From positions 248,001 to 312,000 of the IMG/VR virus record IMGVR_UViG_3300024259_002152: 64,000 bases of DNA, one strand, 5' to 3'. Under the pieces are notes generated by a model that ran no database searches, was not told the origin of the DNA, and saw nothing but the letters and a program-made list of their open reading frames with translations. The position numbers and the translations under genes are program-made. This document shows positions 3,709 to 56,928 of the stretch, one piece after another; positions within the stretch are counted from its first letter, which is position 1, and each line of letters starts with the position of its first letter.

Positions 3709-4734
3709 ATGTGCCTCACAAGAGAACAATTTAGAAATGGAGTATTTAATAGAGATAACAATCAATGTGTTATTTGCGGGGAATCTACGGGATTAGATGC
3801 CCACCACATAACAGAGAGAAGATTATGGGGACCATCTCAAGGATATTATTTGTCTAATGGTGCTACTTTATGTTCCAAACATCATATCGAGGCAGAACAA
3901 ACCATTCTTGGCTGTGAAGAAATTAGAAAAGCCGCAGGCATTAAAGAGATACTATTGCCAGAGCATTTATATGAAGAATATAATTACACCAAATGGGGGG
4001 ATATTGTTCTGCCAACTGGTATGAGACTAAAAGGAGAATTATTTTATGATGAATCTGTGCAAAAGATTTTAAAATCGGGAAATGTTTTAGATATTTATTC
4101 TGATTATGTGAAATATCCTAGGACAATGCATCTTCACTTTTCTTCTAAGGTTACAGAAGATGATAGAATTTTAGATGATGCTTCTTGTTTTGTCGGTAAA
4201 AGAATTATTGTAACAGAAAAGTTTGATGGAGAATGCTCAACTCTTTATGCTAATTATATGCATGCCAGATCTATTGATGGAGAGAATCATCCTTCTAGGA
4301 ATTGGTTGAAAGGTTTTCATAGTAAAATGGGATACAATATCCCTGAAGGATGGAGAGTATGCGGAGAAAATGTATATGCTAAACATACTATATATTATGA
4401 TAATTTAGATACTTATTTCTATGTTTTTTCTATATGGGATCAAAGGAATAATTGCTTGAGTTGGGACGATACTATAGAGTGGTCTCAACTCTTAGACCTT
4501 CAATTAGTTCCTGTCATATATGATGGGATTTGGGACGAAAAAATAGTCAAAGGGTTTTGTAATGACGATAAAAGAGAGGGTTTTGTTGTTAGGATAGCAG
4601 ATGGTTTTTCTTACGGAGAATTTAGAAAGTTTGTAGCTAAATATGTTAATCCTATATTTAAAGATAAATTGAACGAAGAAGATACTTATCATTGGAGATA
4701 TAGTGCTATGACACTTAATAGATTGGCAAAATGA
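3709..4734 (+). CDS. HNH-domain / ATP-dependent RNA ligase fusion
   Basis: N-term RD..CVICG..AHHI..NGATLC..HH (HNH-like); C-term KYPRT.HL, TEKFDG, EGFVVR, VAKYV nucleotidyltransferase motifs. Confidence 0.85.
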   Translation: MCLTREQFRNGVFNRDNNQCVICGESTGLDAHHITERRLWGPSQGYYLSNGATLCSKHHIEAEQTILGCEEIRKAAGIKEILLPEHLYEEYNYTKWGDIVLPTGMRLKGELFYDESVQKILKSGNVLDIYSDYVKYPRTMHLHFSSKVTEDDRILDDASCFVGKRIIVTEKFDGECSTLYANYMHARSIDGENHPSRNWLKGFHSKMGYNIPEGWRVCGENVYAKHTIYYDNLDTYFYVFSIWDQRNNCLSWDDTIEWSQLLDLQLVPVIYDGIWDEKIVKGFCNDDKREGFVVRIADGFSYGEFRKFVAKYVNPIFKDKLNEEDTYHWRYSAMTLNRLAK

Positions 4735-15150: not shown

Positions 15151-16134
15151 ATGTCAAAAGATAACAGTTTTTTAAAGAACGGTAATTTTGCGCCAGGAAG
15201 ACTTTTTACAGGTTTAATCAAAGATATTCCAGATAAGAGAGACTATAAATTCTCTGATATCATGAAGCAGCAGGGAACTATAAAAACAATTAAGGTTAAA
15301 GTGTTAAAGCCAAAACCTTTAAAAAGAGGTTGTTTTAGAAAACATGGATATAAGATTCCTTTAGAAGAAGTGACAGTAGCAATCGATGTTGCTACTCCAA
15401 AACTGTTAAGCAGCTCTCCCTTTCAAATAGATCACTCTAAAAATATGTCTCTCGTAAAAGACCAGAAAAATTTAGGTACTTGCGTGGCATTTTCCGCAGC
15501 CGCGTTAAAAGAATGTCAGGAGAAAGAAGAGCATGATAGAGAGGTAGTATCTGGGAAAGAATATAACAGAGATAAAGAATATGATTATTCTGAACAATGG
15601 ATATATTGGAATTGTAAAAAGATAGATGGTTTTTCTGGGTCAGAAGGAACAACTATCAGAGACGCCATGAAAGTATTGAAGAATATTGGAGTTCCTACCG
15701 AACAAGCTTGGCCTTATACTGATGATCCTGTGAATATAGGAAAACCAGCAAGTTGGGCAAATATGATTGCTCGTTGGGCAACTATAGGGTCTTATTGGAA
15801 TGTCTCAAATTTAACAGAATTAAAAGCAGCATTAGTAGAAGGTCCTGTTATTATTGGTGTGCCTGTATTTGCAGAGTGGTGGGAACCTCCTGGTGGAGTG
15901 GTTAATTACCCATCTAATCCATCTTTAATGTATGGAGGGCATGCTATTTGTGCTGTGGGTTATGATGAAAGTAAACATTTGGTGAAGTTTAAGAATAGCT
16001 GGAGCACATATTGGGGAGAACAAGGGTATGGCTATTTGTCGTATAGATATATAGAGGATTTCTTATGGAGCGGATGGGCAGCAAGAGATATTTCTGTGAC
16101 AAGAGATATGTTAAAAGGAACAAGAGAGTTGTAA
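15151..16134 (+). CDS. papain-like (C1 family) cysteine peptidase
   Basis: DQKNLGTCVAF, GGHAICAVGY, KNSWSTYWGEQGY. Confidence 0.92.
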   Translation: MSKDNSFLKNGNFAPGRLFTGLIKDIPDKRDYKFSDIMKQQGTIKTIKVKVLKPKPLKRGCFRKHGYKIPLEEVTVAIDVATPKLLSSSPFQIDHSKNMSLVKDQKNLGTCVAFSAAALKECQEKEEHDREVVSGKEYNRDKEYDYSEQWIYWNCKKIDGFSGSEGTTIRDAMKVLKNIGVPTEQAWPYTDDPVNIGKPASWANMIARWATIGSYWNVSNLTELKAALVEGPVIIGVPVFAEWWEPPGGVVNYPSNPSLMYGGHAICAVGYDESKHLVKFKNSWSTYWGEQGYGYLSYRYIEDFLWSGWAARDISVTRDMLKGTREL

Positions 16135-16186
16135 TCCATTGTAAGATAAGAAGTTATAAAATTATCAAAAAAATAGAAAATAGTTA

Positions 16187-16214
16187 TTGACAAAGTAGAA
16201 TTTGTCGATATAAT
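16187..16214 (+). promoter_or_regulatory. consensus sigma70 promoter upstream of RNA cluster
   Basis: TTGACA(16187-92)-N16-TATAAT(16209-14); GACAAA/TTTGTC inverted repeat overlaps it. Confidence 0.8.
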
Positions 16215-16244
16215 ACTATCATTGACAAGTAAATAGAGAGAATG

Positions 16245-16458
16245 ATATGGGTTGAAGGTGTGTAGGTTATCGAAAATACTGGCCCTAAGGTTGGCATCTC
16301 AGGGAACGCTACTCGATAGAGTAGTTGGGGCGACTGAGTGAGAATACCGAGCAACCTGGATGTATTTCCAGGCTCTGCGTGCCGAATACGATACCCTTCG
16401 GGATTCGTACAGGTGGCCATAAGTGCTCCAATTCCCTATGCCCGTGACATATCCATAT
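16245..16458 (+). ncRNA. unassigned structured RNA 1 (~214 nt)
   Basis: GC-rich; 5'/3' closing helix ATATGGGT/ATCCATAT; nested helices TGGCC/GGCCA, TTGGCAT/GTGCCGA, CTCAG/CTGAG, CTACTC/GAGTAG, CCTGGA/TCCAGG; C-UUCG-G loop. Confidence 0.65.
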
Positions 16459-16462
16459 TTTT

Positions 16463-16686
16463 TAATTAATATGTTGGCTGCATGGTGTGAAAACGTTGAG
16501 AGGCGACATGCTGAAACCACATGAAAAGCTTGAACTGCTTTTTACAGAAAGTAGGTGCGGGTTTAATAAATGGTGGGTATAAAATTTGCCCAAGGGTATC
16601 GAGGGCCTTTGGTAGCCGCCGCGTACGGCAAGCCATAAATCGTAGCAAGTAGCGGGTAAAGCCAATCTTGTCCAACATGTTAATTA
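16463..16686 (+). ncRNA. unassigned structured RNA 2 (~224 nt)
   Basis: 15-bp closing helix TAATTAATATGTTGG/CCAACATGTTAATTA (one G-U); hairpins AAAAGC/GCTTTT, TGGGTA/TGCCCA, GCCG/CGGC. Confidence 0.62.
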
Positions 16687-16709
16687 TTTGTTCTTTAAAA
16701 AATAAATAT

Positions 16710-17054
16710 GGGGTCGAAAGGTTTTCGATTAGATTAGGAGAAATCAACGGCGTGTACGAGATAGTAGTTGGCTCGTTAAAAATCTACTAAAAACTGTAAT
16801 TGGCAACAATTATGCAATGGCTGCCTAAGCAAAATTAGGTTGTCTATCTTCTGATTCCTATTAGGAAGAATAGGCAAAAGCAATAGGATAGCATAAACTC
16901 TTTTTCTCAAGAGAGGTGAAGCGAAATTAATTTGGGATAGAAATGATGAACCCTGTCAATTGGGGTCAGAGTTTTGAAATTTAAATAATTGACTACACAC
17001 GTAGAAGTTGATTTTGAAATATTCTAAGACTGGGCTTCGATGCCCACGACTCCA
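16710..17054 (+). ncRNA. ssrA: tmRNA; tag (A)GNNYAMAA
   Basis: Acceptor stem GGGGTCG/CGACTCC-A with G3:U70; T arm TGGGC-TTCGAT-GCCCA; pk1 CGAG/CTCG plus TAGTAG/CTACTA; tag ORF 16802-16828. Confidence 0.93.
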
Positions 17055-17102
17055 CTTTTAAAAAAACGCCTATCAAAAAGGCATATAATAAGATAGGACA
17101 TT

Positions 17103-19371: not shown

Positions 19372-19947
19372 ATGATGAAGCAAAGGGTAGTTAAATCGGA
19401 GAAATTAACTAATAATAAATGGATTAATTTATTTAAGGTCCAATATATTAACTCTAAAGAGAAAGTATGTAATTGGGTTTTCGCGTCTCGAAAAAAAGAT
19501 CCTTTCACAGATAAAAAAATAGACGCGGTAGTTCTGGTTGTCACTGTTGATACTCCTAAAGGTCGAATGCTTGTAGTGATAAAAGAATACCGAGCACCTC
19601 TTGCAGATTATGAGTATGGTTTCCCTGCTGGTCTGATAGATCCAGGAATGACAATAGCAGAAACAGTTAAAAAAGAATTAAAGGAAGAAACAGGGCTAGA
19701 TTTAGTTAGGATTATAGGAGAGAGCGGTCCAGTTTATTCTTCTGCTGGATTGTCCGATGAAGCGGTTACTATGGTATTTGTTGAAGCAGAAGGAGAAATG
19801 AATACAGATCATCAAGAAGATACTGAAGATATAGAAGTATTCCTTTATGATATAAATGATATTAGTGATTTACTAACATCTGATAAAAAAATAGGAGCCA
19901 AAGCTTGGGGAGTTTTATACTATTACTCTCAGATTGGGAAAATATAA
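19372..19947 (+). CDS. NUDIX hydrolase (ADP-ribose pyrophosphatase-like)
   Basis: FPAGLIDPG...KELKEETGL, YSSAGLSDE, EDIEV. Confidence 0.88.
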   Translation: MMKQRVVKSEKLTNNKWINLFKVQYINSKEKVCNWVFASRKKDPFTDKKIDAVVLVVTVDTPKGRMLVVIKEYRAPLADYEYGFPAGLIDPGMTIAETVKKELKEETGLDLVRIIGESGPVYSSAGLSDEAVTMVFVEAEGEMNTDHQEDTEDIEVFLYDINDISDLLTSDKKIGAKAWGVLYYYSQIGKI

Positions 19948-23011: not shown

Positions 23012-23689
23012 ATGATTATGGCAAGTTTTTGGAAGATGTTCAAAAATAGTGTTAGAGAGAAGAAGGATAAAGCTGCTGAAAAAATGGCAGATCCGATTCG
23101 GGATGGCAAATTTGCTATCGAAGATTCTAAAGGAAAATTGGCAGATATACAAGGTAAGATTGCTACATATTCTGCACAGATCAAGAAGAATCAACGTGAT
23201 TATGATGCCGAGGTGGCAGAGGTTAGGAAATGGGGGAATCTTGCTAAAAAAGCAGCAGAAGCGAGTAATGAAGAAGACGTGCGTAAATGCATTACTCTTA
23301 AAACTCAGGCTCAGCAACGTGCCGATAATCTTAAGAAAATGATCACTCAAGATGAAGGCATGCTTAACAGTATGAAGAGTCAGTGGCAGACAAAGAACAA
23401 TCAAGTTAGTCAGGCTGAAAGTAATCATTCTCAGCTAGCAGTTCGCAAACAAATGGCCGAAGCGAGAAAAGAATTTGCCAAATCTTCTCAAGGTCTCGAC
23501 TCGGACAGTTGTTTTTCAGAATTGGACAAGCTTCAACAGTCGGTAGAAGCTGATGAGTGCGAGGCAGAGGCATATGAAGAAATGGCACCTACGAATGACC
23601 TCGAAGATATGTCAAGTAAGTATGGAGCTTCAGGCGATTCGGCTGTGGATGATGAAGTAGCCAAAATGATGGCTAATGCTAAAAAGTAG
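23012..23689 (+). CDS. pspA: PspA/IM30 family protein
   Basis: N-terminal amphipathic helix, ADP, long coiled coil, W..LAKKA....NE. Confidence 0.88.
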   Translation: MIMASFWKMFKNSVREKKDKAAEKMADPIRDGKFAIEDSKGKLADIQGKIATYSAQIKKNQRDYDAEVAEVRKWGNLAKKAAEASNEEDVRKCITLKTQAQQRADNLKKMITQDEGMLNSMKSQWQTKNNQVSQAESNHSQLAVRKQMAEARKEFAKSSQGLDSDSCFSELDKLQQSVEADECEAEAYEEMAPTNDLEDMSSKYGASGDSAVDDEVAKMMANAKK

Positions 23690-23714
23690 TTAATAAACTT
23701 TTAGCTATGATTGG

Positions 23715-23770
23715 AACTTCCTATGATGTATTGTGGATTGTTGTTCACCTACTCATAGGAAGTTTTTCTT
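23715..23770 (+). terminator. long hairpin / terminator between pspA and channel gene
   Basis: AACTTCCTATGA (23715-26) / TCATAGGAAGTT (23753-64) + T run. Confidence 0.55.
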
Positions 23771-23781
23771 TAAAGAGGATA

Positions 23782-24867
23782 ATGATGAAAAATATATTAA
23801 TATTTTTAGTTTTGCTTATGATCTGCAAATTCTCTTACTCGGAGAGCATATATAAAACCACTCAAATTTATGTCTCTGATATGAAGCCCTGTGTTATTGT
23901 CGAGGAGTCAGAAGATAGTCATATTCCTGTTTCTATTTCTGGTTTTGAAATAGATTTAGGAAATGAAGTTGCAAAAGACCTCATAGCACAAGACATAATT
24001 AAAGATTGGGAATTTGTTCCTATATCATGGCATAAACTAGAAGAGAATATAAAAAACGGCAATGCAGATATGGCTTGTGCTGGATTTACGATACGTTCTA
24101 AAAGAATGGACTGGGCAGATTTCTCTGTGCCTACTATGAATTCTGGTTTAGGAATAATGGTATTAAAAAATCCAGAAAAGAATTCTATATTATGTAAATT
24201 AAAAGTTCTCTATGAAGCCCTTATAATGCCCATAACCTTATTCGGATTGTTTTTGCTAGCTTTTTCTCATTTTATATGGTTGGCAGAAAAGAAAAATCCT
24301 GGGATTAATGACCACTATTTTCCAGGGATTTTTGAGTCAATATATTTTTGTATAGTTACATGTTCTACAGTTGGTTATGGAGATTATACTCCTAAAAGAT
24401 GGACAACCAAAATAGTAACAATAGCACTTATATTTTGTGGTATTATTGCTTTTTGTAATTTCACAGCTTTACTTTCTGCCGATTATACTACTGAGAAAAT
24501 TACAGGAGATATTAGATCTCCAGAGGATCTAAAAGGTAAGATTGTCCTAACTCAAAAAGGGACAACAAGTGATGATTATGCAAAAGGGTTAGGGGCTTCT
24601 AAAGTTAAGAAAGTTGATAATATAGATACCGCTTGCGACTATTTATTGCTTGGAAGAGGGGATGCTGTAGTATTTGATCATCCAGTTCTACTTAATTATG
24701 TAAAAGAGAATCCCGATAAGGTTGAATTAGTAGATGGTATTTTCGATGAACAATATTATGGGTTTGTGTTTCCTAAAGGAAGTCCTTTGAAAAGAGCAGT
24801 TGATAAATCCATCCTTAAATTATATGAAGATGGGACTTATAAACGACTTTATCAAAAGTGGTTCTAA
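23782..24867 (+). CDS. GluR0-like ligand-gated K+ channel
   Basis: Signal peptide; SGFEIDL and TIRSKR..WADFS.P (S1); TM-pore TVGYGD-TM; S2 with YGFVFPKGSPL; AGAGGA RBS. Confidence 0.9.
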   Translation: MMKNILIFLVLLMICKFSYSESIYKTTQIYVSDMKPCVIVEESEDSHIPVSISGFEIDLGNEVAKDLIAQDIIKDWEFVPISWHKLEENIKNGNADMACAGFTIRSKRMDWADFSVPTMNSGLGIMVLKNPEKNSILCKLKVLYEALIMPITLFGLFLLAFSHFIWLAEKKNPGINDHYFPGIFESIYFCIVTCSTVGYGDYTPKRWTTKIVTIALIFCGIIAFCNFTALLSADYTTEKITGDIRSPEDLKGKIVLTQKGTTSDDYAKGLGASKVKKVDNIDTACDYLLLGRGDAVVFDHPVLLNYVKENPDKVELVDGIFDEQYYGFVFPKGSPLKRAVDKSILKLYEDGTYKRLYQKWF

Positions 24868-31347: not shown

Positions 31348-32722
31348 TGAGTATTATTAGGAAATTTAACATATTTTTACAATTTTCTAAAGTTTTTTAG
31401 AGGAATTTTCGATTAAATATATAATAATTAATCAGATGCTTGAACTGAACCTTAAAGTATTTAATATTATATATTTAAGAGTAATTTCTTCTTCCTTTAG
31501 TTCAGTTCAGGAATTAGATTTTACTCTTTTTTTATAAATTATGACTCTAAAAGCATTTAAATTTAGATTAGAGCCTAATTTACAACAAAAAGTTTTGATT
31601 AACAAAACTTTAGGTTGTTGTAGATTTATCTATAATCAAATGCTTAACGAAAAATAAACTAAATACAAAAATTCTGGTAAATCTTCCACTAAAACTGAAA
31701 AAGAATATAAAATAGAGTTTGATTGGTTAAAAGAAGTAGATAGTATTGCTCTTCAGCAATCTCGAATAGATCTAAAGACTGCTTATGATAATTTCTTTAG
31801 AAAAATTAAAGCAGGACAACCTACTAATCTAAGATTTAAATCCAAAAAAAATCCTAAAAACTCTTACAGAACTATAAATATTAATAATTCTATTAGAATA
31901 GCAAACAATACTATTAAACTTCCTAAGTTGGGATTTGTTAAATTTAGAAAATCAAAAGAAATATCAGGAATTATTAAATCAGTCACAATTTCTAAGAATA
32001 TCTTAAATAGATATTATATATCTGTTCTTTGTAGAACAGAGATAGAAAATTTTCCTGAATTAGATGCTAAAATAGGAATAGATGTGGGATTAAAAGATTT
32101 TTGTATTACTTCAAACAATGAATTTGTTTCTAATCCTAAATATTTAAGAACATTAGAACTTAAATTAAAGAAAGCACAAAAAATACTCAGTAAAAGAGCT
32201 AAAGGTGGTAAAAATAGATTTAAACAACAAAAGAGAGTCTTTAAGATACATGAGAAAATCAGAAATCAGAGGTTAGATTTTTTACATAAATTATCTACTA
32301 AACTAATTAACGAAAACCAAGTAATCTGTTTAGAAGATTTACAAGTAAAGAATATGGTAAAAAATCATTATTTGGCTAAAAGTATTTCAGATGCTAGTTG
32401 GAGTAAATTTATAGAATTGCTAAAATACAAAGCGGATTGGTATGGAAGAAATCTAATACAAATAGATAAATTCTTTCCTAGTTCAAAACTTTGTAGTAAT
32501 TGCGGAAGTGCCAAGAAAGATTTGACTCTAAAAGATAGAGAGTATTATTGTAGTTCTTGTGGAATTACAATTGACAGAGATTATAATGCTTCATTAAATA
32601 TTTTGAATGAAGGATTAAAAATATTAAATAGCGGTTGGGACGACCGTGATAGCTTACCAAATATACAAACACTAGTTTGTAGTTCGTAAGAATTATCCAC
32701 CTTAATGGTGGAGGAAGTTCAA
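31348..32722 (+). mobile_element. IS200/IS605-family tnpB-only (IS1341-like) element
   Basis: tnpB; right-end hairpin TCCACC-TTAAT-GGTGGA and terminal TTCAA; excision recreates a 22-nt junction found twice elsewhere. Confidence 0.75.
31541..32689 (+). pseudogene. tnpB: TnpB RNA-guided nuclease with in-frame TAA at 31655-31657
   Basis: MTLKAFKFRLEPN..GCCRFIYN start at 31541, in frame with GIDVG, LEDL, CSNCG/CSSCG, DRDYNAS; stop at codon 39. Confidence 0.85.
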
Positions 32723-35300: not shown

Positions 35301-35328
35301 TTGACTGCAAAGTAGAAAACAGTATAAT
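35301..35328 (+). promoter_or_regulatory. sigma70-type promoter of Ro60 gene
   Basis: TTGACT-N16-TATAAT with AAAGTAGAA in spacer; near-identical block at 56862-56890. Confidence 0.7.
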
Positions 35329-35386
35329 TGCCAAAGTAGAATTCAATATATCTAAATAATTAGGTTGATTTATAAGGAGAACAACA

Positions 35387-37114
35387 ATGGCTAAGTATGC
35401 AAATCATGTAGCGAATCCAAAGACTTCACAAACAAAGAAGGCAAAGAGTACTCAGGTAAAAGGCAGAGCGGGTGGGTATGTTTTCAAGGTCGATGACTGG
35501 ACAAGGCTGAACCGTTTCCTAATCATTGGTAGTGAGAAGGGTTCTTACTATGCCTCTGATCGTGAGTTGACTATGGAGAATTACGACTGCATCCTGAATT
35601 GTTTGAAGTTGGATGCAAAGCGTACTGTCGATACTATTGTAGAGATTAGTGATCAGGGTCGTGCCATTAAGAATGATCCAGCTATCTTTGCATTGGCGGT
35701 ATGCAGTGTTCATGGCGACGAAAAGACCAAAGCATATGCTAATCTAGTTATGCCTAAGGTTGCTCGTTTCTCTACTGCTTTCTTCTCATGGGTTGATTCT
35801 ATCAACACATTGAAGGAAGGTCGTAAGGGTAAGGGTCTGTTAAGAGCCATTGGAAGATGGTATACAGAAAAAGATGCTGTGAAGTTGGCATACCAGATTT
35901 GTAAGTACCCAGGTCGTTCAATAGGTGGCCAAAGATGGACTCACGGGGACGTTTTGCGTCTTGCAAGGATCTCTCCATCTAAGGATGGCAGACCTTCTAG
36001 AAATGGTAGGGCACTAACGATTCCTTCAGAGGACCATGCTACTGTTTTTCATTACGCAACACATGGTATCACAACTGCTGCGACTCTTGCTCAAAGAGAA
36101 AAAGATGCTAAAGCTACTGGTAAGACCCAGGAAGCTCCTGGTATCTCTGTAAAGCAGTATAAAGCTTTGAAGGATAGTAAGCTTAAGTATATCTGGGCAC
36201 ATGAGCAATGTAAGGTTGCGACTAAGAATAGTGAAGTAGTTTCATTAATTAAAAACTACAATCTTACAAGAGAATCTGTCCCTCCACAGTTTAGAAATGA
36301 ATTGTTGGTGCAAAAGGCCCTGCTGCCAGGGATGCCTATGACTGCTTTGATCCGAAATTTGGGAAGCATGACTTCTTCAGGTCTTTTGAAGCCATTGGCT
36401 GATGAGACTTCATTAGTAATCGACAAGATTACAAATGAGGAAATACTGAAGAAGAGTCGTATTCATCCTATGACACTTATGCTGGCATTGAAGACTTACA
36501 GCAGTGGTAGTGGCATGAGGACTACTTGGAAGCCTGTAGGAGCTATCAAAGATGCTATGGAAGATGCTTTCTACAAAGCGTTCAACTATGTTGAGCCAAC
36601 TGGAAAGAAATTTCTTTACGGTATTGATGTTAGTGGTTCTATGGGTTGGTCAGAAGTTAATGGTATGCAAGCACGCGAAGCTGCCGCAGTCGTAGCAATG
36701 ACGTGTGCAAGAACCGAGAAGAACTATGATCTTATGGCTTTTGGTCATGCATTCGTGCCACTTAACATTACCGCTAAGGATAGTTTGGATACTGTGGTTA
36801 GACGAACTGCTAATTTGAATTTTGGCGGAACTGATTGTGCATTACCTATGAAGTATGCAATGAAAAATGGTCTGGATGTTGATGTGTTTGTTGTTCTAAC
36901 GGACAGCGAGACATGGTTTGGTGATATTCATCCATTTGAAGCATTGAAGCAGTATCGCAAGAAGTTCAATAAGAACGCCAAGCTTGCCGTGTTGGCATTT
37001 ACAAGCAATGGCTTTACAATAGCCGACCCAAGCGATGCGGGAATGATGGATATTGTTGGTTTGGATTCTAATGTGCCGAAGGTATTATCTGAATTCGCGG
37101 CAAATAGACTTTAA
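35387..37114 (+). CDS. Ro60/TROVE-domain RNA-binding protein (Rsr-like)
   Basis: AGGYVF..DDW.RL.RFL..GSE.G.YY, MPMTALIRNLG.MT, RIHP, vWA MIDAS DVSGSM, GGTDCALPM, TDSETW. Confidence 0.95.
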   Translation: MAKYANHVANPKTSQTKKAKSTQVKGRAGGYVFKVDDWTRLNRFLIIGSEKGSYYASDRELTMENYDCILNCLKLDAKRTVDTIVEISDQGRAIKNDPAIFALAVCSVHGDEKTKAYANLVMPKVARFSTAFFSWVDSINTLKEGRKGKGLLRAIGRWYTEKDAVKLAYQICKYPGRSIGGQRWTHGDVLRLARISPSKDGRPSRNGRALTIPSEDHATVFHYATHGITTAATLAQREKDAKATGKTQEAPGISVKQYKALKDSKLKYIWAHEQCKVATKNSEVVSLIKNYNLTRESVPPQFRNELLVQKALLPGMPMTALIRNLGSMTSSGLLKPLADETSLVIDKITNEEILKKSRIHPMTLMLALKTYSSGSGMRTTWKPVGAIKDAMEDAFYKAFNYVEPTGKKFLYGIDVSGSMGWSEVNGMQAREAAAVVAMTCARTEKNYDLMAFGHAFVPLNITAKDSLDTVVRRTANLNFGGTDCALPMKYAMKNGLDVDVFVVLTDSETWFGDIHPFEALKQYRKKFNKNAKLAVLAFTSNGFTIADPSDAGMMDIVGLDSNVPKVLSEFAANRL

Positions 37115-38280: not shown

Positions 38281-39492
38281 ATGGAACATATGATGAAAGA
38301 GTTATTAAATATTGGAATAGAACATCCTGCTCGTGTAATGGAATTTACCGAGTTGACTCAAGGATTGTTCGCGGAAGTTGCTGATGGTAATGTAAGCGTT
38401 ACTTATCATCCAGAATTTCCACATCTTGCTCTGTTTAAATATACTCAAGATTGCGTTACGGAGAGAAAATGGAACAAATTTTCTCTTATGGCTAGAGGTC
38501 TAATATTAGATCTTCAAGATAAAAAAGTTGTTGCAGTTAGTTTTACAAAATTTTTCAACTACGGAGAAATTGAAGAAGGCTCTCGATCTATCATAGAGCC
38601 AGATTTTCTTGTTACAGAGAAAATGGACGGCTCATTAGGCATAATGTACTTTTTTGCTGATCAATTCAGGTTCGCGACAGCAGGTTCATTTATATCGGAA
38701 CAGGCTCAATGGGCAGATCAATGGGCAAAGGAGCATATAGCCATTGATAAATTAGATAAGACAAGCACTTATCTGTTTGAAATAATTTATCATGAGAATA
38801 AAATTGTGGTTCATTACAATTTTGAAGGACTGGTTTTATTAAGCATATTTAATTCTTATGGATTAGAGTGTAATTATGAGCAAATTAAGTGGGAAGCGTC
38901 ATATATGGGAACTCGGTATGTGAAGCAATATAACTTTGAAGATATGGAAACCATAGTCAATACTGCTAAAACTTTAGATAGCAATAATGAGGGTTATGTC
39001 ATACGCTTCAAAAGCGGAATACGTTTAAAAATTAAAGGCGATGAGTATGTCCGCGTGCATAGACTAATTTCTCAAGTCACACCTCTTGCTATATGGGAAT
39101 CTATGGTTAATGGTGACGACTTAGAAGGGATAAAAAAAGATTTGCCAGAAGAGATGGAAAAAGACTTTGATACTATAAGAGCAATTTTTAATGCAAAATT
39201 AGAAGCTTTTATAAAAGAGGTAGAAAGTCTTTGTGAGCGAACTAAATCTATGTCAGATAAGGAATTAGGCATATATATGCAACAGGGTCTTGTGGCATTC
39301 GGAAACACAGTTTTTAAAGATTCTTTTAAATTTATTTTCCATATGAGAAAGAATAAATTCTATGAATCTCTTAACGATGTGCCATCGTATGGTCGTAGAA
39401 GAATTTTTGCTGCATTTAGACCAAAAGCTAATATATTGGAAGGATATAAGCCTTCGTCAGTAGTTAATAGATTCGCCAATATGGACAACTAA
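38281..39492 (+). CDS. T4 Rnl1-like RNA ligase
   Basis: ARGLI, KFFN, TEKMDGS, FEII, EGYV, LKIK..EY. Confidence 0.9.
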   Translation: MEHMMKELLNIGIEHPARVMEFTELTQGLFAEVADGNVSVTYHPEFPHLALFKYTQDCVTERKWNKFSLMARGLILDLQDKKVVAVSFTKFFNYGEIEEGSRSIIEPDFLVTEKMDGSLGIMYFFADQFRFATAGSFISEQAQWADQWAKEHIAIDKLDKTSTYLFEIIYHENKIVVHYNFEGLVLLSIFNSYGLECNYEQIKWEASYMGTRYVKQYNFEDMETIVNTAKTLDSNNEGYVIRFKSGIRLKIKGDEYVRVHRLISQVTPLAIWESMVNGDDLEGIKKDLPEEMEKDFDTIRAIFNAKLEAFIKEVESLCERTKSMSDKELGIYMQQGLVAFGNTVFKDSFKFIFHMRKNKFYESLNDVPSYGRRRIFAAFRPKANILEGYKPSSVVNRFANMDN

Positions 39493-40058: not shown

Positions 40059-40847
40059 ATGATAGGTTCCATAATAGGCGATGTAATTGGTTCTCCTTAT
40101 GAGGGGAGAAGGATGAATTTCTTTGATTATGATTTCCCTCTCTTTAATGAAAGATCTACATTTACAGATGATACTATACTAACTGTTGCTACAGCTAAAG
40201 CTATACTTGAAGATATTCCTTACAAAGATGTTTATCTTGAGTTTGGTAGAAAGTATAAACGTAAGGGTTATGGTGGAGCTTTTGAAGCATGGTTATGTTC
40301 TGATGATCCTCAACCTTATGATAGTTGGGGAAATGGTTCTGCTATGAGGGTGGGCCCTATAGGTTTTTATTTTGACGAAGATGATGAAATCTTAAAAGAA
40401 GCAAAAGCAAGTTCAGAAGTAACTCATAATCATCCACATGGAATAGACGGTGCTCAAGCAATAGCTTTAGCTATTCATCATGCTAAAATAGGAGACAGCA
40501 AAGAACAGATAAAAAAAATTGTTTTTGCTGTGACTGGTTATTATGATTTGAATAAAACTGTAGATGATTATAGAAAGAATTATAAGTTTGATACTAGTTG
40601 TAAAGTAACTGTTCCCCAAGCATTAACTGCCTTCTTTGAATCTGATAGTTTTGAAGATTGTATTAGAAAGGCAGTTTTAATGGGGGGAGATACAGATACG
40701 CTGGCGTGTATAGCAGGGTCAGTAGCAGAAGCATATTATAAGATTATTCCTAATAATATTAGCATGAAAGCTTTAGAAAAACTACCTGTAGAATTTTCAA
40801 TTATAATAAATCGTTTTTATAGGGAAGTTTTAGAAGGAAATATATGA
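40059..40847 (+). CDS. ADP-ribosylglycohydrolase (DraG/ARH family)
   Basis: GD..GS.YE, FTDDT, GNGSAMR, VTHNH, GGDTDT. Confidence 0.92.
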   Translation: MIGSIIGDVIGSPYEGRRMNFFDYDFPLFNERSTFTDDTILTVATAKAILEDIPYKDVYLEFGRKYKRKGYGGAFEAWLCSDDPQPYDSWGNGSAMRVGPIGFYFDEDDEILKEAKASSEVTHNHPHGIDGAQAIALAIHHAKIGDSKEQIKKIVFAVTGYYDLNKTVDDYRKNYKFDTSCKVTVPQALTAFFESDSFEDCIRKAVLMGGDTDTLACIAGSVAEAYYKIIPNNISMKALEKLPVEFSIIINRFYREVLEGNI

Positions 40848-41539
40848 TGCTGATTACTGTCATTGCAGATATGCATGGAAATTTGAAGTTTAAAGTTCCA
40901 GAAACGGATTTGCTTTTGATAGCGGGAGATATATGTCCAGCTTCTCATGATCGTTATATATCTATTGGTATGCAAAGAACATGGTTGGAAAACAAATTTA
41001 AAAAATGGATTTATGAACAACCTGTTGATCATGCTATTGCTATAGCTGGAAACCATTGTTGGATATGGGAATGTGCTGAAAGTGAAGTTCCTATATGGTT
41101 TCCTAAAAATTGTGTCGATAAAGAAATGGTGGAGGATAATAAGATTGAATATATAGAGGACTTTTTAGTTTTCTATAAGGATTTAAAAATATATGGGACT
41201 CCTGTTCAGCTTTCTTTTAATAATTGGGCTTTTAATCGGGAAGAAGAATCACTACAAAAGTATTGGGATAATATCCCTGAAGGACTAGATATACTTCTTC
41301 TACATAGTCCTCCATATGGAATATTAGACCAAACTCATCATCCTAAATATCCTTCTAAGCGTATAGGTAGTAAAAGTTTGTTAAAAAGAATAAAACAGGT
41401 TAAACCTAAACTGGTAGTTTTTGGTCATAATCATGGAGACCATGGGGTGGTTGAAGAAGATGGTATTAAGTATATTAATGCTTCTTTAATTGACGAGCAT
41501 TATAAAATGGTAAGAAAACCGATTGTTATAGAAATATAA
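40844..41539 (+). CDS. calcineurin-like metallophosphoesterase
   Basis: D.HG, AGD, GNH, HSPP, FGHNH. Confidence 0.9.
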   Translation: MMLITVIADMHGNLKFKVPETDLLLIAGDICPASHDRYISIGMQRTWLENKFKKWIYEQPVDHAIAIAGNHCWIWECAESEVPIWFPKNCVDKEMVEDNKIEYIEDFLVFYKDLKIYGTPVQLSFNNWAFNREEESLQKYWDNIPEGLDILLLHSPPYGILDQTHHPKYPSKRIGSKSLLKRIKQVKPKLVVFGHNHGDHGVVEEDGIKYINASLIDEHYKMVRKPIVIEI

Positions 41540-56795: not shown

Positions 56796-56928
56796 TCATA
56801 TCTTCTTATTCTTCATAGGGTTATAGAAATCTAATTATTTTTATTTTCTCTATTGCAAATAAAAGTAGAATACAGTATAATTGTCAAAGTGAAAGTCGGA
56901 AGTAGTAATCTTATTGAAAGGATATGTG

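What the first reader, a model, noticed from the sequence alone, without database searches (positions are those of the whole stretch)
16245..16458. Unassigned multi-helix RNA 1 upstream of tmRNA
Seen: a GC-rich island with no + strand ORF, about 30 nt downstream of a perfect TTGACA-N16-TATAAT promoter. Its ends pair (16245-52 with 16451-58) and enclose nested helices: TGGCC 16280/GGCCA 16415, TTGGCAT 16291/GTGCCGA 16379, CTCAG 16298/CTGAG 16334, CTACTC-GATA-GAGTAG 16309-24, CCTGGA/TCCAGG 16355-72, and TACGA..C-UUCG-G..TCGTA 16387-409. I do not see tRNA, SRP helix-8 or RNase P signatures. Inference: a new structured ncRNA in a promoter-RNA1-RNA2-tmRNA transcript.
Basis: partly seen in the sequence, partly recalled or inferred. 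Interest (0 to 1): 0.85.

Follow-up and report, generated by a model that had tools for sequence, protein, structure and literature searches.

The report
Phage Y-like RNA beside tmRNA
This is a real, conserved, highly folded non-coding RNA of about 215 nt in a 351-kb marine phage; it is most likely a new variety of Y RNA, the RNA partner of the Ro60 protein that the same phage encodes 19 kb away, and it is made from one promoter together with a second unknown RNA and the phage's tmRNA.

Summary
All seven helices are at the stated coordinates, behind a perfect TTGACA-N16-TATAAT promoter and ahead of a second structured RNA and a tmRNA (16710-17057).

I found six further distinct homologues in marine metagenomes. 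In the alignment, 92.6% of pair cells form standard pairs, against 29-43% for slid controls. 24 of 60 pairs carry changes on both sides. No reading frame is conserved. An RNA-seq run holds contigs of a about 90% identical variant of RNA1 and of RNA2, but none over the flanking genes.

No Rfam family matches, but the RNA is probably not a new kind. Its invariant 5' end (GGGUUGAAGG, 5-6 nt, GGUUAUC) sits on the 5' strand of the terminal stem. It aligns with Y RNAs encoded next to Ro genes in actinobacteriophages. The window also encodes a Ro60 orthologue (35387-37114) with no RNA gene beside it.

[quoted passage not shown] Instead it carries a about 135-nt domain with three hairpin arms. In relatives the space between promoter and tmRNA holds zero to at least five RNA modules.

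Verdict: a new Y-RNA variant (confidence about 0.6). Ro60 binding is untested.

The parts
16187..16214 (+). Sigma-70-type promoter TTGACA-N16-TATAAT driving the RNA1-RNA2-tmRNA unit. The -35 overlaps a TTGACAAAGTAGAA element, which recurs in a weaker copy at 16223-16237.
   Evidence: 12 of 12 matches. Searches show the element is shared with the Ro60 gene promoter.
16244..16463 (+). RNA1 as a whole: terminal stem, large internal loop, domain with three hairpin arms, and a 3' run of U (16458-16463).
   Evidence: Seven distinct homologues score 87-269 bits with model R1.
16244..16254 (+). 5' strand of terminal stem P1. It pairs with 16448-16459.
   Evidence: helix 1: 98.7% paired; A-U to G-C and G-C to A-U exchanges.
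16249..16271 (+). Y-RNA-type 5' module GGGUUGAAGG-UGUGUA-GGUUAUC, the presumed Ro60-binding strand. GGUUGAAGG and GGUUAUC are invariant in all seven homologues.
   Evidence: It is the best PWM site of the whole window.
16257..16266 (+). 5' strand of the second stem segment (P2a). It pairs with 16435-16443.
   Evidence: helix 2: 92.6% paired, 3 pairs with both-side changes.
16267..16279 (+). 5' side of the large internal loop, containing the conserved AUCGAA. The 3' side is 16420-16434, with the conserved (C)UCCAAU.
   Evidence: A CGAA motif in the internal loop is described for phage Y-like RNAs in PMC12135203.
16280..16419 (+). Upper, presumed effector-binding domain. It comprises P2 (16280-84/16415-19, followed by the invariant CUAAG), P3 (16291-97/16379-85), P4 (16298-302/16334-38), P5 hairpin (16309-24), P6 with extension (16351-78) and P7 UUCG hairpin (16387-409).
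   Evidence: helices 3-10. Searches show compensatory changes.
16435..16459 (+). 3' strands of P2a and P1 (CCUAUGCCCGUGACAUAUCCAUAU). CAUAUCC resembles the CACAUCC / CAUGUCU found before the closing stem of actinophage Y RNAs.
16463..16687 (+). RNA2, the second unassigned structured RNA, closed by a 15-bp A/U-rich stem (16463-77/16673-87). It is found in more of the fetched relatives than RNA1.
16710..17057 (+). tmRNA, with tag reading frame GNNYAMAA* at 16802-16828.
35387..37114 (+). Ro60/Rsr orthologue (575 aa, TROVE + Ro60 vWA), the presumed protein partner. It has its own promoter (35301-35330) and flanking terminators, and no RNA gene beside it.

Best explanation
RNA1 is a Y RNA, the non-coding partner of a Ro60 ring protein, and belongs to a previously undescribed subfamily.

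Proposed mechanism:
1. It is transcribed from the promoter at 16187-16214 as the first unit of an RNA1-RNA2-tmRNA precursor.
2. It is cut out of that precursor. Each unit is closed by a long A/U-rich stem whose flanking A-run and U-run pair with each other.
3. Its 5' and 3' ends form a stem of about 20 bp. The 5' strand of this stem presents GGGUUGAAGG...GGUUAUC, which binds the phage Ro60 encoded at 35387-37114.
4. The about 135-nt upper domain (hairpin arms P4/P5, P6 and P7, branching at two stacked three-way junctions) then acts as the second Y-RNA module. It either tethers Ro60 to an effector such as a 3'-5' exoribonuclease (PNPase in the systems studied so far) or gates access to the Ro60 cavity. 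Either way it would steer degradation or quality control of structured RNA during infection.

Shown here: the RNA fold, its conservation, the motif match, the Ro60 gene, and the presence of a variant in an RNA library.

Inferred: Ro60 binding, processing, the effector and the biological role.
For: 1. The structured RNA is real: (see the observation check). No ORF is conserved.

2. RNA-seq run X23 has 151-nt contigs over RNA1 (16307-16422) and RNA2 (16465-16584) of a about 90% identical variant. It has a piece of tmRNA, but zero depth over the flanking protein genes. Its changes include G16358-C16369 to A-U, and U.G to U-A at 16292/16384.

3. The 5' ends of all seven RNA1 homologues align with ten Y RNAs that lie directly upstream of Ro genes in phages LinStu, BearBQ, FuzzBuster and Sixama. 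The shared pattern is [A/G]GG-Y-Y-G..., then 7-9 nt, then (Y)GGUUAYC, placed immediately after the 5' strand of the closing stem. The opposite strand is alike too: GGGU/AUCC pairing, with CAUAUCC against CACAUCC.

4. A regular expression for this signature hits every RNA1 homologue and every one of those Y RNAs. It gives only about 2 likely chance hits in 726 kb.

5. A two-block matrix trained only on the actinophage Y RNAs puts its best site of the entire window, both strands, at 16249. That is exactly the RNA1 5' motif.

6. The window encodes Ro60: TROVE 6e-32, Ro60 vWA 1e-62, and PDB 1yvp 3e-116.

7. Neither this Ro60 gene nor its relatives in four other phage contigs have any RNA gene beside them. 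The partner RNA must therefore be encoded elsewhere.

8. The other RNA1-bearing phage type that can be tested probably also has Ro60. Peptidase P0009 and Ro60 P0130 both report a longest contig of 89,447 nt.

9. The RNA promoter and the Ro60 promoter share an unusual TTGNCAAAGTAGAA element in two copies.

10. The architecture fits the published definition of Y RNAs. That definition is a long stem formed by the 5' and 3' ends and holding the Ro60 site, plus a second effector module (bioRxiv 10.1101/312249). A 5'-proximal GNCGAAN0-1G motif is also described (PMC4201824).
Against: - RNA1 has U where all ten reference Y RNAs, and the published motif GNCGAA, have C (GGGUUGA against GGGYCGA).
- The matrix score of 14.2 bits is not above chance as a score: 34 of 100 shuffled windows reach it.
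- An nhmmer profile of the reference 5' modules does not report the site.
- I saw the motif match before I tested it.
- The gene lies 19 kb from rsr, whereas nearly all YrlA genes lie within 4 kb (PMC4201824).
- Rfam's Y_RNA and YrlA models give nothing, even at E<=10.
- There is no tRNA-like T or D arm.
- The 548-kb relative has Ro60 but no RNA1 at its tmRNA locus, so the two are not strictly linked at this locus.
- No binding data exist.
Confidence: 0.62

Rival explanations
1. RNA1 is a stable structured RNA of a truly new class that works without Ro60. It could be a scaffold or decoy for another phage or host protein, such as an RNA ligase, a nuclease or a ribosome-associated factor. On this reading the resemblance to the Y-RNA 5' module is convergent or due to chance.
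For: No Rfam match. The motif departs at the C that is invariant in the ten reference Y RNAs aligned here, and is not significant by score alone. The gene is unlinked from rsr. It travels with other unassigned RNA modules (RNA2, X, Y, Z) that lack the signature. The window also encodes two RNA ligases.
Against: The best matrix site of 128,000 positions falls exactly on the 5' strand of RNA1's closing stem. Both blocks and their spacing are invariant in seven homologues. A Ro60 gene without any adjacent RNA is present.
Confidence: 0.27
2. RNA1 is a cis-acting leader of the tmRNA transcript, for example a processing, folding or antitermination element, and not an independent RNA product.
For: It lies between the promoter and tmRNA on the same strand, with no predicted terminator.
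Against: Close relatives make tmRNA directly from the same kind of promoter with no module at all, as in L002, L026 and L027. Others have different sets of modules. RNA1 is separated from tmRNA by RNA2. It is closed on itself by a covarying stem of about 20 bp. Its sequence is conserved in junctions and loops far beyond what a processing stem needs.
Confidence: 0.07
3. It is not an RNA gene. It would instead be a small protein gene (for example the 78-aa ORF 16184-16420 on the minus strand) or a G+C-rich remnant with chance complementarity.
For: ORFs of 40-78 aa can be drawn on both strands. The single-sequence fold z-score is only -2.09.
Against: Every frame on both strands carries stops in most homologues, and none is open in all. 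Insertions and deletions are not in threes. 24 pairs show compensatory change. All neighbouring genes are on the + strand.
Confidence: 0.01

Closest known systems
Y RNAs encoded next to Ro genes of actinobacteriophages (e.g. Mycobacterium phage LinStu, Microbacterium phage FuzzBuster, Gordonia phages BearBQ and Sixama)
   Same: The closing stem is formed by the two ends. The 5' strand carries [A/G]GGYYG..., 7-9 nt, then GGUUAYC, and the 3' strand carries CAYRUCY before the stem. Several such RNAs sit in tandem, and in Sixama and SparkleGoddess they lie among tRNA genes. The genome encodes Ro60.
   Different: RNA1 has UU where they have YC. It is about twice as long. It lies 19 kb from the Ro gene instead of directly beside it. 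It is followed by a tmRNA. The hosts are marine and unknown, not actinobacteria.
YrlA (Rfam RF02553; PMC4201824; bioRxiv 10.1101/312249)
   Same: Two-module plan: a Ro60-binding stem plus an effector-binding module.
   Different: The YrlA effector module is a tRNA mimic with T and D arms. RNA1 has none, and the YrlA model does not match it. The same model does find the LinStu YrlA (36 bits, E 1.4e-5).
Deinococcus radiodurans Yrn1 and Thermus phage phiLo Yrl1/Yrl2
   Same: These are Y RNAs whose effector part is a set of stem-loops or a large internal loop rather than a full tRNA mimic. The Thermus phage Ro60 binds its own Y-like RNAs and forms a complex with host PNPase (PMC12135203).
   Different: They are adjacent to their Ro gene and shorter.
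Small stable RNAs co-transcribed with tRNA genes in phage T4 (species 1 and 2 RNAs; from my own knowledge, not tested)
   Same: Phage-encoded structured RNAs processed from a precursor shared with tRNA-like genes.
   Different: No sequence or structural relation was tested, and their function is also unknown.

Membership tests
Y RNA (Ro60-associated non-coding RNA) | 5' and 3' ends pair into a long stem | tested here: met
   helices 1-2: 11 + 9 pairs, 98.7% and 92.6% paired, 5 pairs with both-side changes.
Y RNA (Ro60-associated non-coding RNA) | Conserved Ro60-binding motif on the 5' strand near the 5' end (metazoan GGUCCGA; bacterial GNCGAAN0-1G; PMC4201824) | tested here: inconclusive
   RNA1 has an invariant G-U-U-G-A-A-G-G at 16251-16258, the published motif with U for C. 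It aligns with ten phage Y RNAs and is the top matrix site of the window. The score is not above shuffles, and nhmmer is silent.
   GGUUAUC at 16265-16271, invariant in seven homologues, with the same spacing as in the reference RNAs.
Y RNA (Ro60-associated non-coding RNA) | A second module (internal loop or stem-loops) beyond the Ro60-binding stem | tested here: met
   a large internal loop (13 x 15 nt) and a covarying 135-nt domain with three hairpin arms.
Y RNA (Ro60-associated non-coding RNA) | The genome encodes a Ro60/Rsr protein | tested here: met
   (35387-37114). Probably also true for the L017-type relative.
Y RNA (Ro60-associated non-coding RNA) | Gene lies within about 4 kb of the Ro60 gene on the same strand | tested here: not met
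   Same strand, but 19 kb apart. No RNA gene flanks rsr here or in four relatives.
Y RNA (Ro60-associated non-coding RNA) | Physically bound by Ro60 | not testable with these tools
   Needs EMSA or immunoprecipitation.
YrlA subfamily (RF02553) | tRNA-like effector domain with conserved T and D arms | tested here: not met
   No RF02553 hit at E<=10. No T-loop pattern in the array. The positive control works.
tmRNA (RF00023) or its precursor parts | Covered by the tmRNA model | tested here: not met
   The tmRNA match is complete (model 1-374) at 16710-17057. ARAGORN finds no tRNA in the window.
RNase P RNA / SRP RNA / TPP riboswitch / large phage RNAs (GOLLD, ROOL) | Match to the family covariance model. 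For RNase P, also the P4 pseudoknot topology. | tested here: not met
   No hit at E<=10. The helices of RNA1 are strictly nested. The resemblances I saw by eye (CUGAG...ACCUGG to TPP; ACAGGUGGCC to RNase P CR-V) are not conserved in the homologues.

The most novel reading that the evidence does not exclude
The variable string of structured RNAs between this promoter and tmRNA would be a phage 'RNA toolkit' operon. It holds none in some relatives, RNA2 alone in others, RNA1+RNA2 here, and at least five modules in L017.

In this reading RNA1 links Ro60 not to PNPase but to the trans-translation or RNA-repair machinery (tmRNA and the phage's two RNA ligases). The other modules (RNA2, X, Y, Z) would be further undescribed ribonucleoprotein components. 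The result would be a phage-built surveillance system for damaged or defence-cleaved RNA.
Probability: 0.15. Interest if true: 0.8.

Novelty: new variant of a known kind. Interest (0 to 1): 0.55.

Why it matters
Y RNAs and Ro60 are conserved from bacteria to humans, but what the second module of a Y RNA recruits is known in very few cases. This family gives a Y-like RNA with a large, well-defined effector domain that does not resemble tRNA and is backed by covariation.

Three consequences follow:
- Ro60 partners can be encoded far from the Ro60 gene and therefore escape the usual search, which looks within 4 kb of rsr using the YrlA model.
- The family ties Ro60 biology to a tmRNA transcription unit in giant marine phages.
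- It points to at least four further unassigned structured RNA families (RNA2, X, Y, Z) in the same slot. These are the more novel part of the locus.

Tried and rejected
Searches that gave nothing or only the window itself:
- Rfam at gathering score and at E<=10: only tmRNA.
- ARAGORN: nothing.
- blastn against 50,697 phage records: no match.
- Exact-pattern scans of IMG/VR with four RNA1 patterns: only the window's own contig.
- Two scans of 185,579 species genomes: none, then one likely chance hit in a Methanoregulaceae genome that the RNA1 covariance model R1 does not match.
- Metagenome scan: one true relative and six chance hits in coding DNA.
- The useful route was the conserved upstream C1 peptidase gene.

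Ideas dropped:
- RNA1 and RNA2 as paralogues: they do not align.
- RNase P-like: the helices are nested, not a P4 pseudoknot, and the 'ACAG' is not conserved.
- TPP riboswitch-like: no model hit.
- An 11-nt tetraloop receptor made of CCUAAG plus UAUGG: the UAUGG is not conserved.
- A kink-turn in the loop of the closing stem: absent in the short type.
- Stop-codon recoding: the standard code already gives long ORFs.
- A canonical Y RNA next to rsr: none.
- RNA2 and modules X, Y, Z as Y RNAs: they lack the signature.

Statistical test: an nhmmer profile of the reference 5' modules did not recover RNA1, so the motif match rests on position and conservation, not on score.

Full report
**What is there**

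The window is part of a 350,866-bp phage contig from a seawater metagenome, IMGVR_UViG_3300024259_002152. Nearly all genes are on the + strand and G+C is about 33%.

After a C1 peptidase gene (15151-16134) comes a perfect TTGACA-N16-TATAAT promoter at 16187-16214. Next come a second structured stretch closed by a 15-bp stem (16463-16687) and a complete tmRNA at 16710-17057 (124.7 bits).

Rfam gives nothing else, even at E<=10 on the 661 bases alone. ARAGORN finds no tRNA.

**Relatives**

Related phages were found through a tmRNA pattern, one metagenome pattern scan and homologues of the upstream peptidase. All keep the order peptidase, promoter, tmRNA. The space in between varies:

| Locus | Content between promoter and tmRNA |
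|---|---|
| L002, L026, L027 | nothing |
| L005 | half of RNA2 |
| L004, L016, L034 | RNA2 homologue, no RNA1; part of the L016 gap is unassigned |
| window, L033 | RNA1 + RNA2 |
| L017 (= L007) | RNA1-X-RNA2-Y-Z, an 880-1060 nt non-coding array |
| L021, L022, L031, L037 | RNA1, RNA2 and further modules; L037 and parts of the others are still unassigned |

RNA1 therefore exists in seven distinct versions:
- a long type (window, L017, L021, L031);
- a short type (L022, L033, L037), in which the P4-P5 arm is reduced to one hairpin.

**Is the fold real?**

A plain RNAalifold run on two sequences already shows five compensatory pairs.

I aligned all seven with it and counted pairs:
- 92.6% of cells are paired, against 29-43% when partners are slid by 1-3 columns.
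- 24 of 60 pairs have changes on both sides, against 8.4 in shuffles (0 of 500 reach the observed value).
- Every helix has at least one such pair.
- P3 is the weakest (79% paired) and does not hold cleanly in the short type.
- The alignment is fitted to the model, which inflates these numbers somewhat.

Two independent observations agree with the fold. The P7 loop stays a stable tetraloop (UUCG or CUUG) or UUUU on changing stems. An RNA-seq variant shows G16358-C16369 changed to A-U.

No reading frame is open across the homologues.

**Expression**

One public RNA-seq run of an aquatic metagenome holds 151-nt contigs on RNA1 (16307-16422, 11 differences) and on RNA2 (16465-16584). The upstream overhang of the RNA2 contig matches the RNA1 3' end. 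The run also holds a piece of tmRNA, and nothing over the flanking protein genes.

This fits abundant stable RNAs. It is contig-level evidence without strand or ends, and DNA carry-over cannot be excluded.

**What it is**

A Pfam survey of the window turned up a Ro60/Rsr orthologue at 35387-37114: TROVE 6e-32 and Ro60 vWA 1e-62, and PDB 1yvp 3e-116. It also showed two RNA ligases.

Ro60 proteins work with Y RNAs. In bacteria and phages these usually lie within 4 kb of the Ro60 gene (PMC4201824). Here the Ro60 gene has its own promoter and terminators and no RNA gene beside it. The same is true in four related contigs.

As a control, Rfam's YrlA model does find the Y RNA next to the Ro gene of Mycobacterium phage LinStu.

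I then read that region and the regions upstream of Ro genes in three other cultured phages. They share a common 5' module: closing stem, [A/G]GGYCG(A)..., 7-9 nt, (Y)GGUUAYC. The 3' strand has CAYRUCY before the stem.

RNA1 has GGGUUGAAGG, 5-6 nt, GGUUAUC at exactly that place, invariant in all seven homologues. It also has CAUAUCC on the 3' strand, with the same GGGU/AUCC pairing as FuzzBuster.

Two tests bear on this match:
- A regular expression for the signature hits all RNA1 homologues and all reference Y RNAs, with about two chance hits in 726 kb.
- A matrix trained on the reference RNAs alone puts the best site of the whole window at 16249.

**Limits of that identification**

- RNA1 has U where every reference has C.
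- The matrix score itself is reached by a third of shuffled windows.
- A short nhmmer profile does not report the site.
- I noticed the match before testing it.
- RNA1 has no tRNA-like arm, so it is not a YrlA.
- The 548-kb relative has Ro60 but only RNA2 at this locus.
- Co-occurrence could be checked in only two RNA1-bearing phage types, and both appear to have Ro60.

I therefore put the Y-RNA reading at about 0.6.

**How it probably works**

By analogy with the published two-module plan of Y RNAs, the closing stem would bind the phage Ro60. The 135-nt upper domain would bind an effector, or gate the Ro60 ring.

A Thermus phage Ro60 with its own Y-like RNAs forms a complex with host PNPase (PMC12135203). 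That makes an exoribonuclease the first candidate.

A second invariant block, GG(U/C)CCUAAGG at 16281-16290 on helix P2, also resembles the metazoan GGUCCGA site. It could be a second protein site. This is speculation.

The RNA promoter and the Ro60 promoter share a two-copy TTGNCAAAGTAGAA element. The 9-mer occurs 9 times in the window against 2 expected. This hints at common regulation.

**Verdict**

It is best filed as a new variant of a known kind, a Y RNA, and not as a categorically new RNA. The surrounding modular array, RNA2 above all, remains unexplained.

Noticed in passing
window 16463-16687: RNA2 is a second unassigned structured RNA closed by a 15-bp A/U-rich stem. It has homologues in L004, L005 (5' half only), L016, L017, L021, L022, L031, L033, L034 and L037. 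Its core is strongly conserved (GUUUAAUA..GUGGGUAUAAAA.UUG.CC..GGUAU.GAGGGC), and the closing stem shows compensatory changes between the window and L004. There is no Rfam hit and no Y-RNA signature. It occurs in relatives that lack RNA1.
   Followed up: partly
L017 4414-4586, 4846-4946, 4941-5052; L021 2894-3742; L022 3909-4544: Further structured modules (X, Y, Z) and unassigned stretches lie between RNA2 and tmRNA in relatives. Each is closed by an A/U-rich stem. Y recurs in L022 and L031, and Z recurs in L021. None matches Rfam.
   Followed up: partly
window 35387-37114: Ro60/Rsr orthologue (575 aa). By sequence it is closer to Xenopus Ro60 (3e-116) than to Deinococcus Rsr (3e-84). It has its own promoter and terminators and no adjacent RNA gene. 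Homologues of 64-84% identity are present in other large marine phage contigs.
   Followed up: yes
window 16187-16237, 35301-35341, about 56850-56890: Three promoters share a two-copy element TTGNCAAAGTAGAA, one copy over the -35 and one just after the -10. The 9-mer AAAGTAGAA occurs 9 times in the window against about 2 expected. The element is conserved at the Ro60 promoter of relatives L039, L040 and L042. It may be an operator or a phage-specific promoter class.
   Followed up: partly
window 3709-4734 and 38281-39492: Two RNA ligase genes (PF09414, and T4 Rnl1-like PF09511). Nearby are a NUDIX hydrolase (19372-19947), an ADP-ribosylglycohydrolase (40059-40847) and a metallophosphoesterase (40844-41539). 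Together they look like an RNA repair or counter-defence set.
   Followed up: no
window 23707-24867: A phage gene combining a solute-binding domain with an ion-channel pore (SBP_bac_3, Lig_chan, Ion_trans_2). It resembles a glutamate-receptor-like ligand-gated channel and sits next to a PspA/IM30 homologue (23012-23689).
   Followed up: no
window 31928-32689; L029 1380-2660: TnpB-like genes (OrfB_IS605 + Cas12f1-like TNB). The one in the window is short (253 aa). In L029 a full-length copy sits between the deaminase and peptidase genes.
   Followed up: no
window 16710-17057: Rfam finds the phage tmRNA (124.7 bits) but ARAGORN misses it. Its tag frame reads GNNYAMAA*. Relatives vary, for example ANSYAMAA in L002, which I read by eye.
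   Followed up: partly
L048 4957, 5109, 5527; L047 192: The Y-RNA 5' signature also occurs between tRNA genes in Gordonia phage Sixama and Streptomyces phage SparkleGoddess. Y-like RNAs embedded in tRNA arrays may therefore be common and unannotated.
   Followed up: no
L017 1-1418; L021-type ENA contig: In some relatives the DNA methylase gene upstream of the locus carries an intein (Intein_splicing between two N6_N4_Mtase halves).
   Followed up: no
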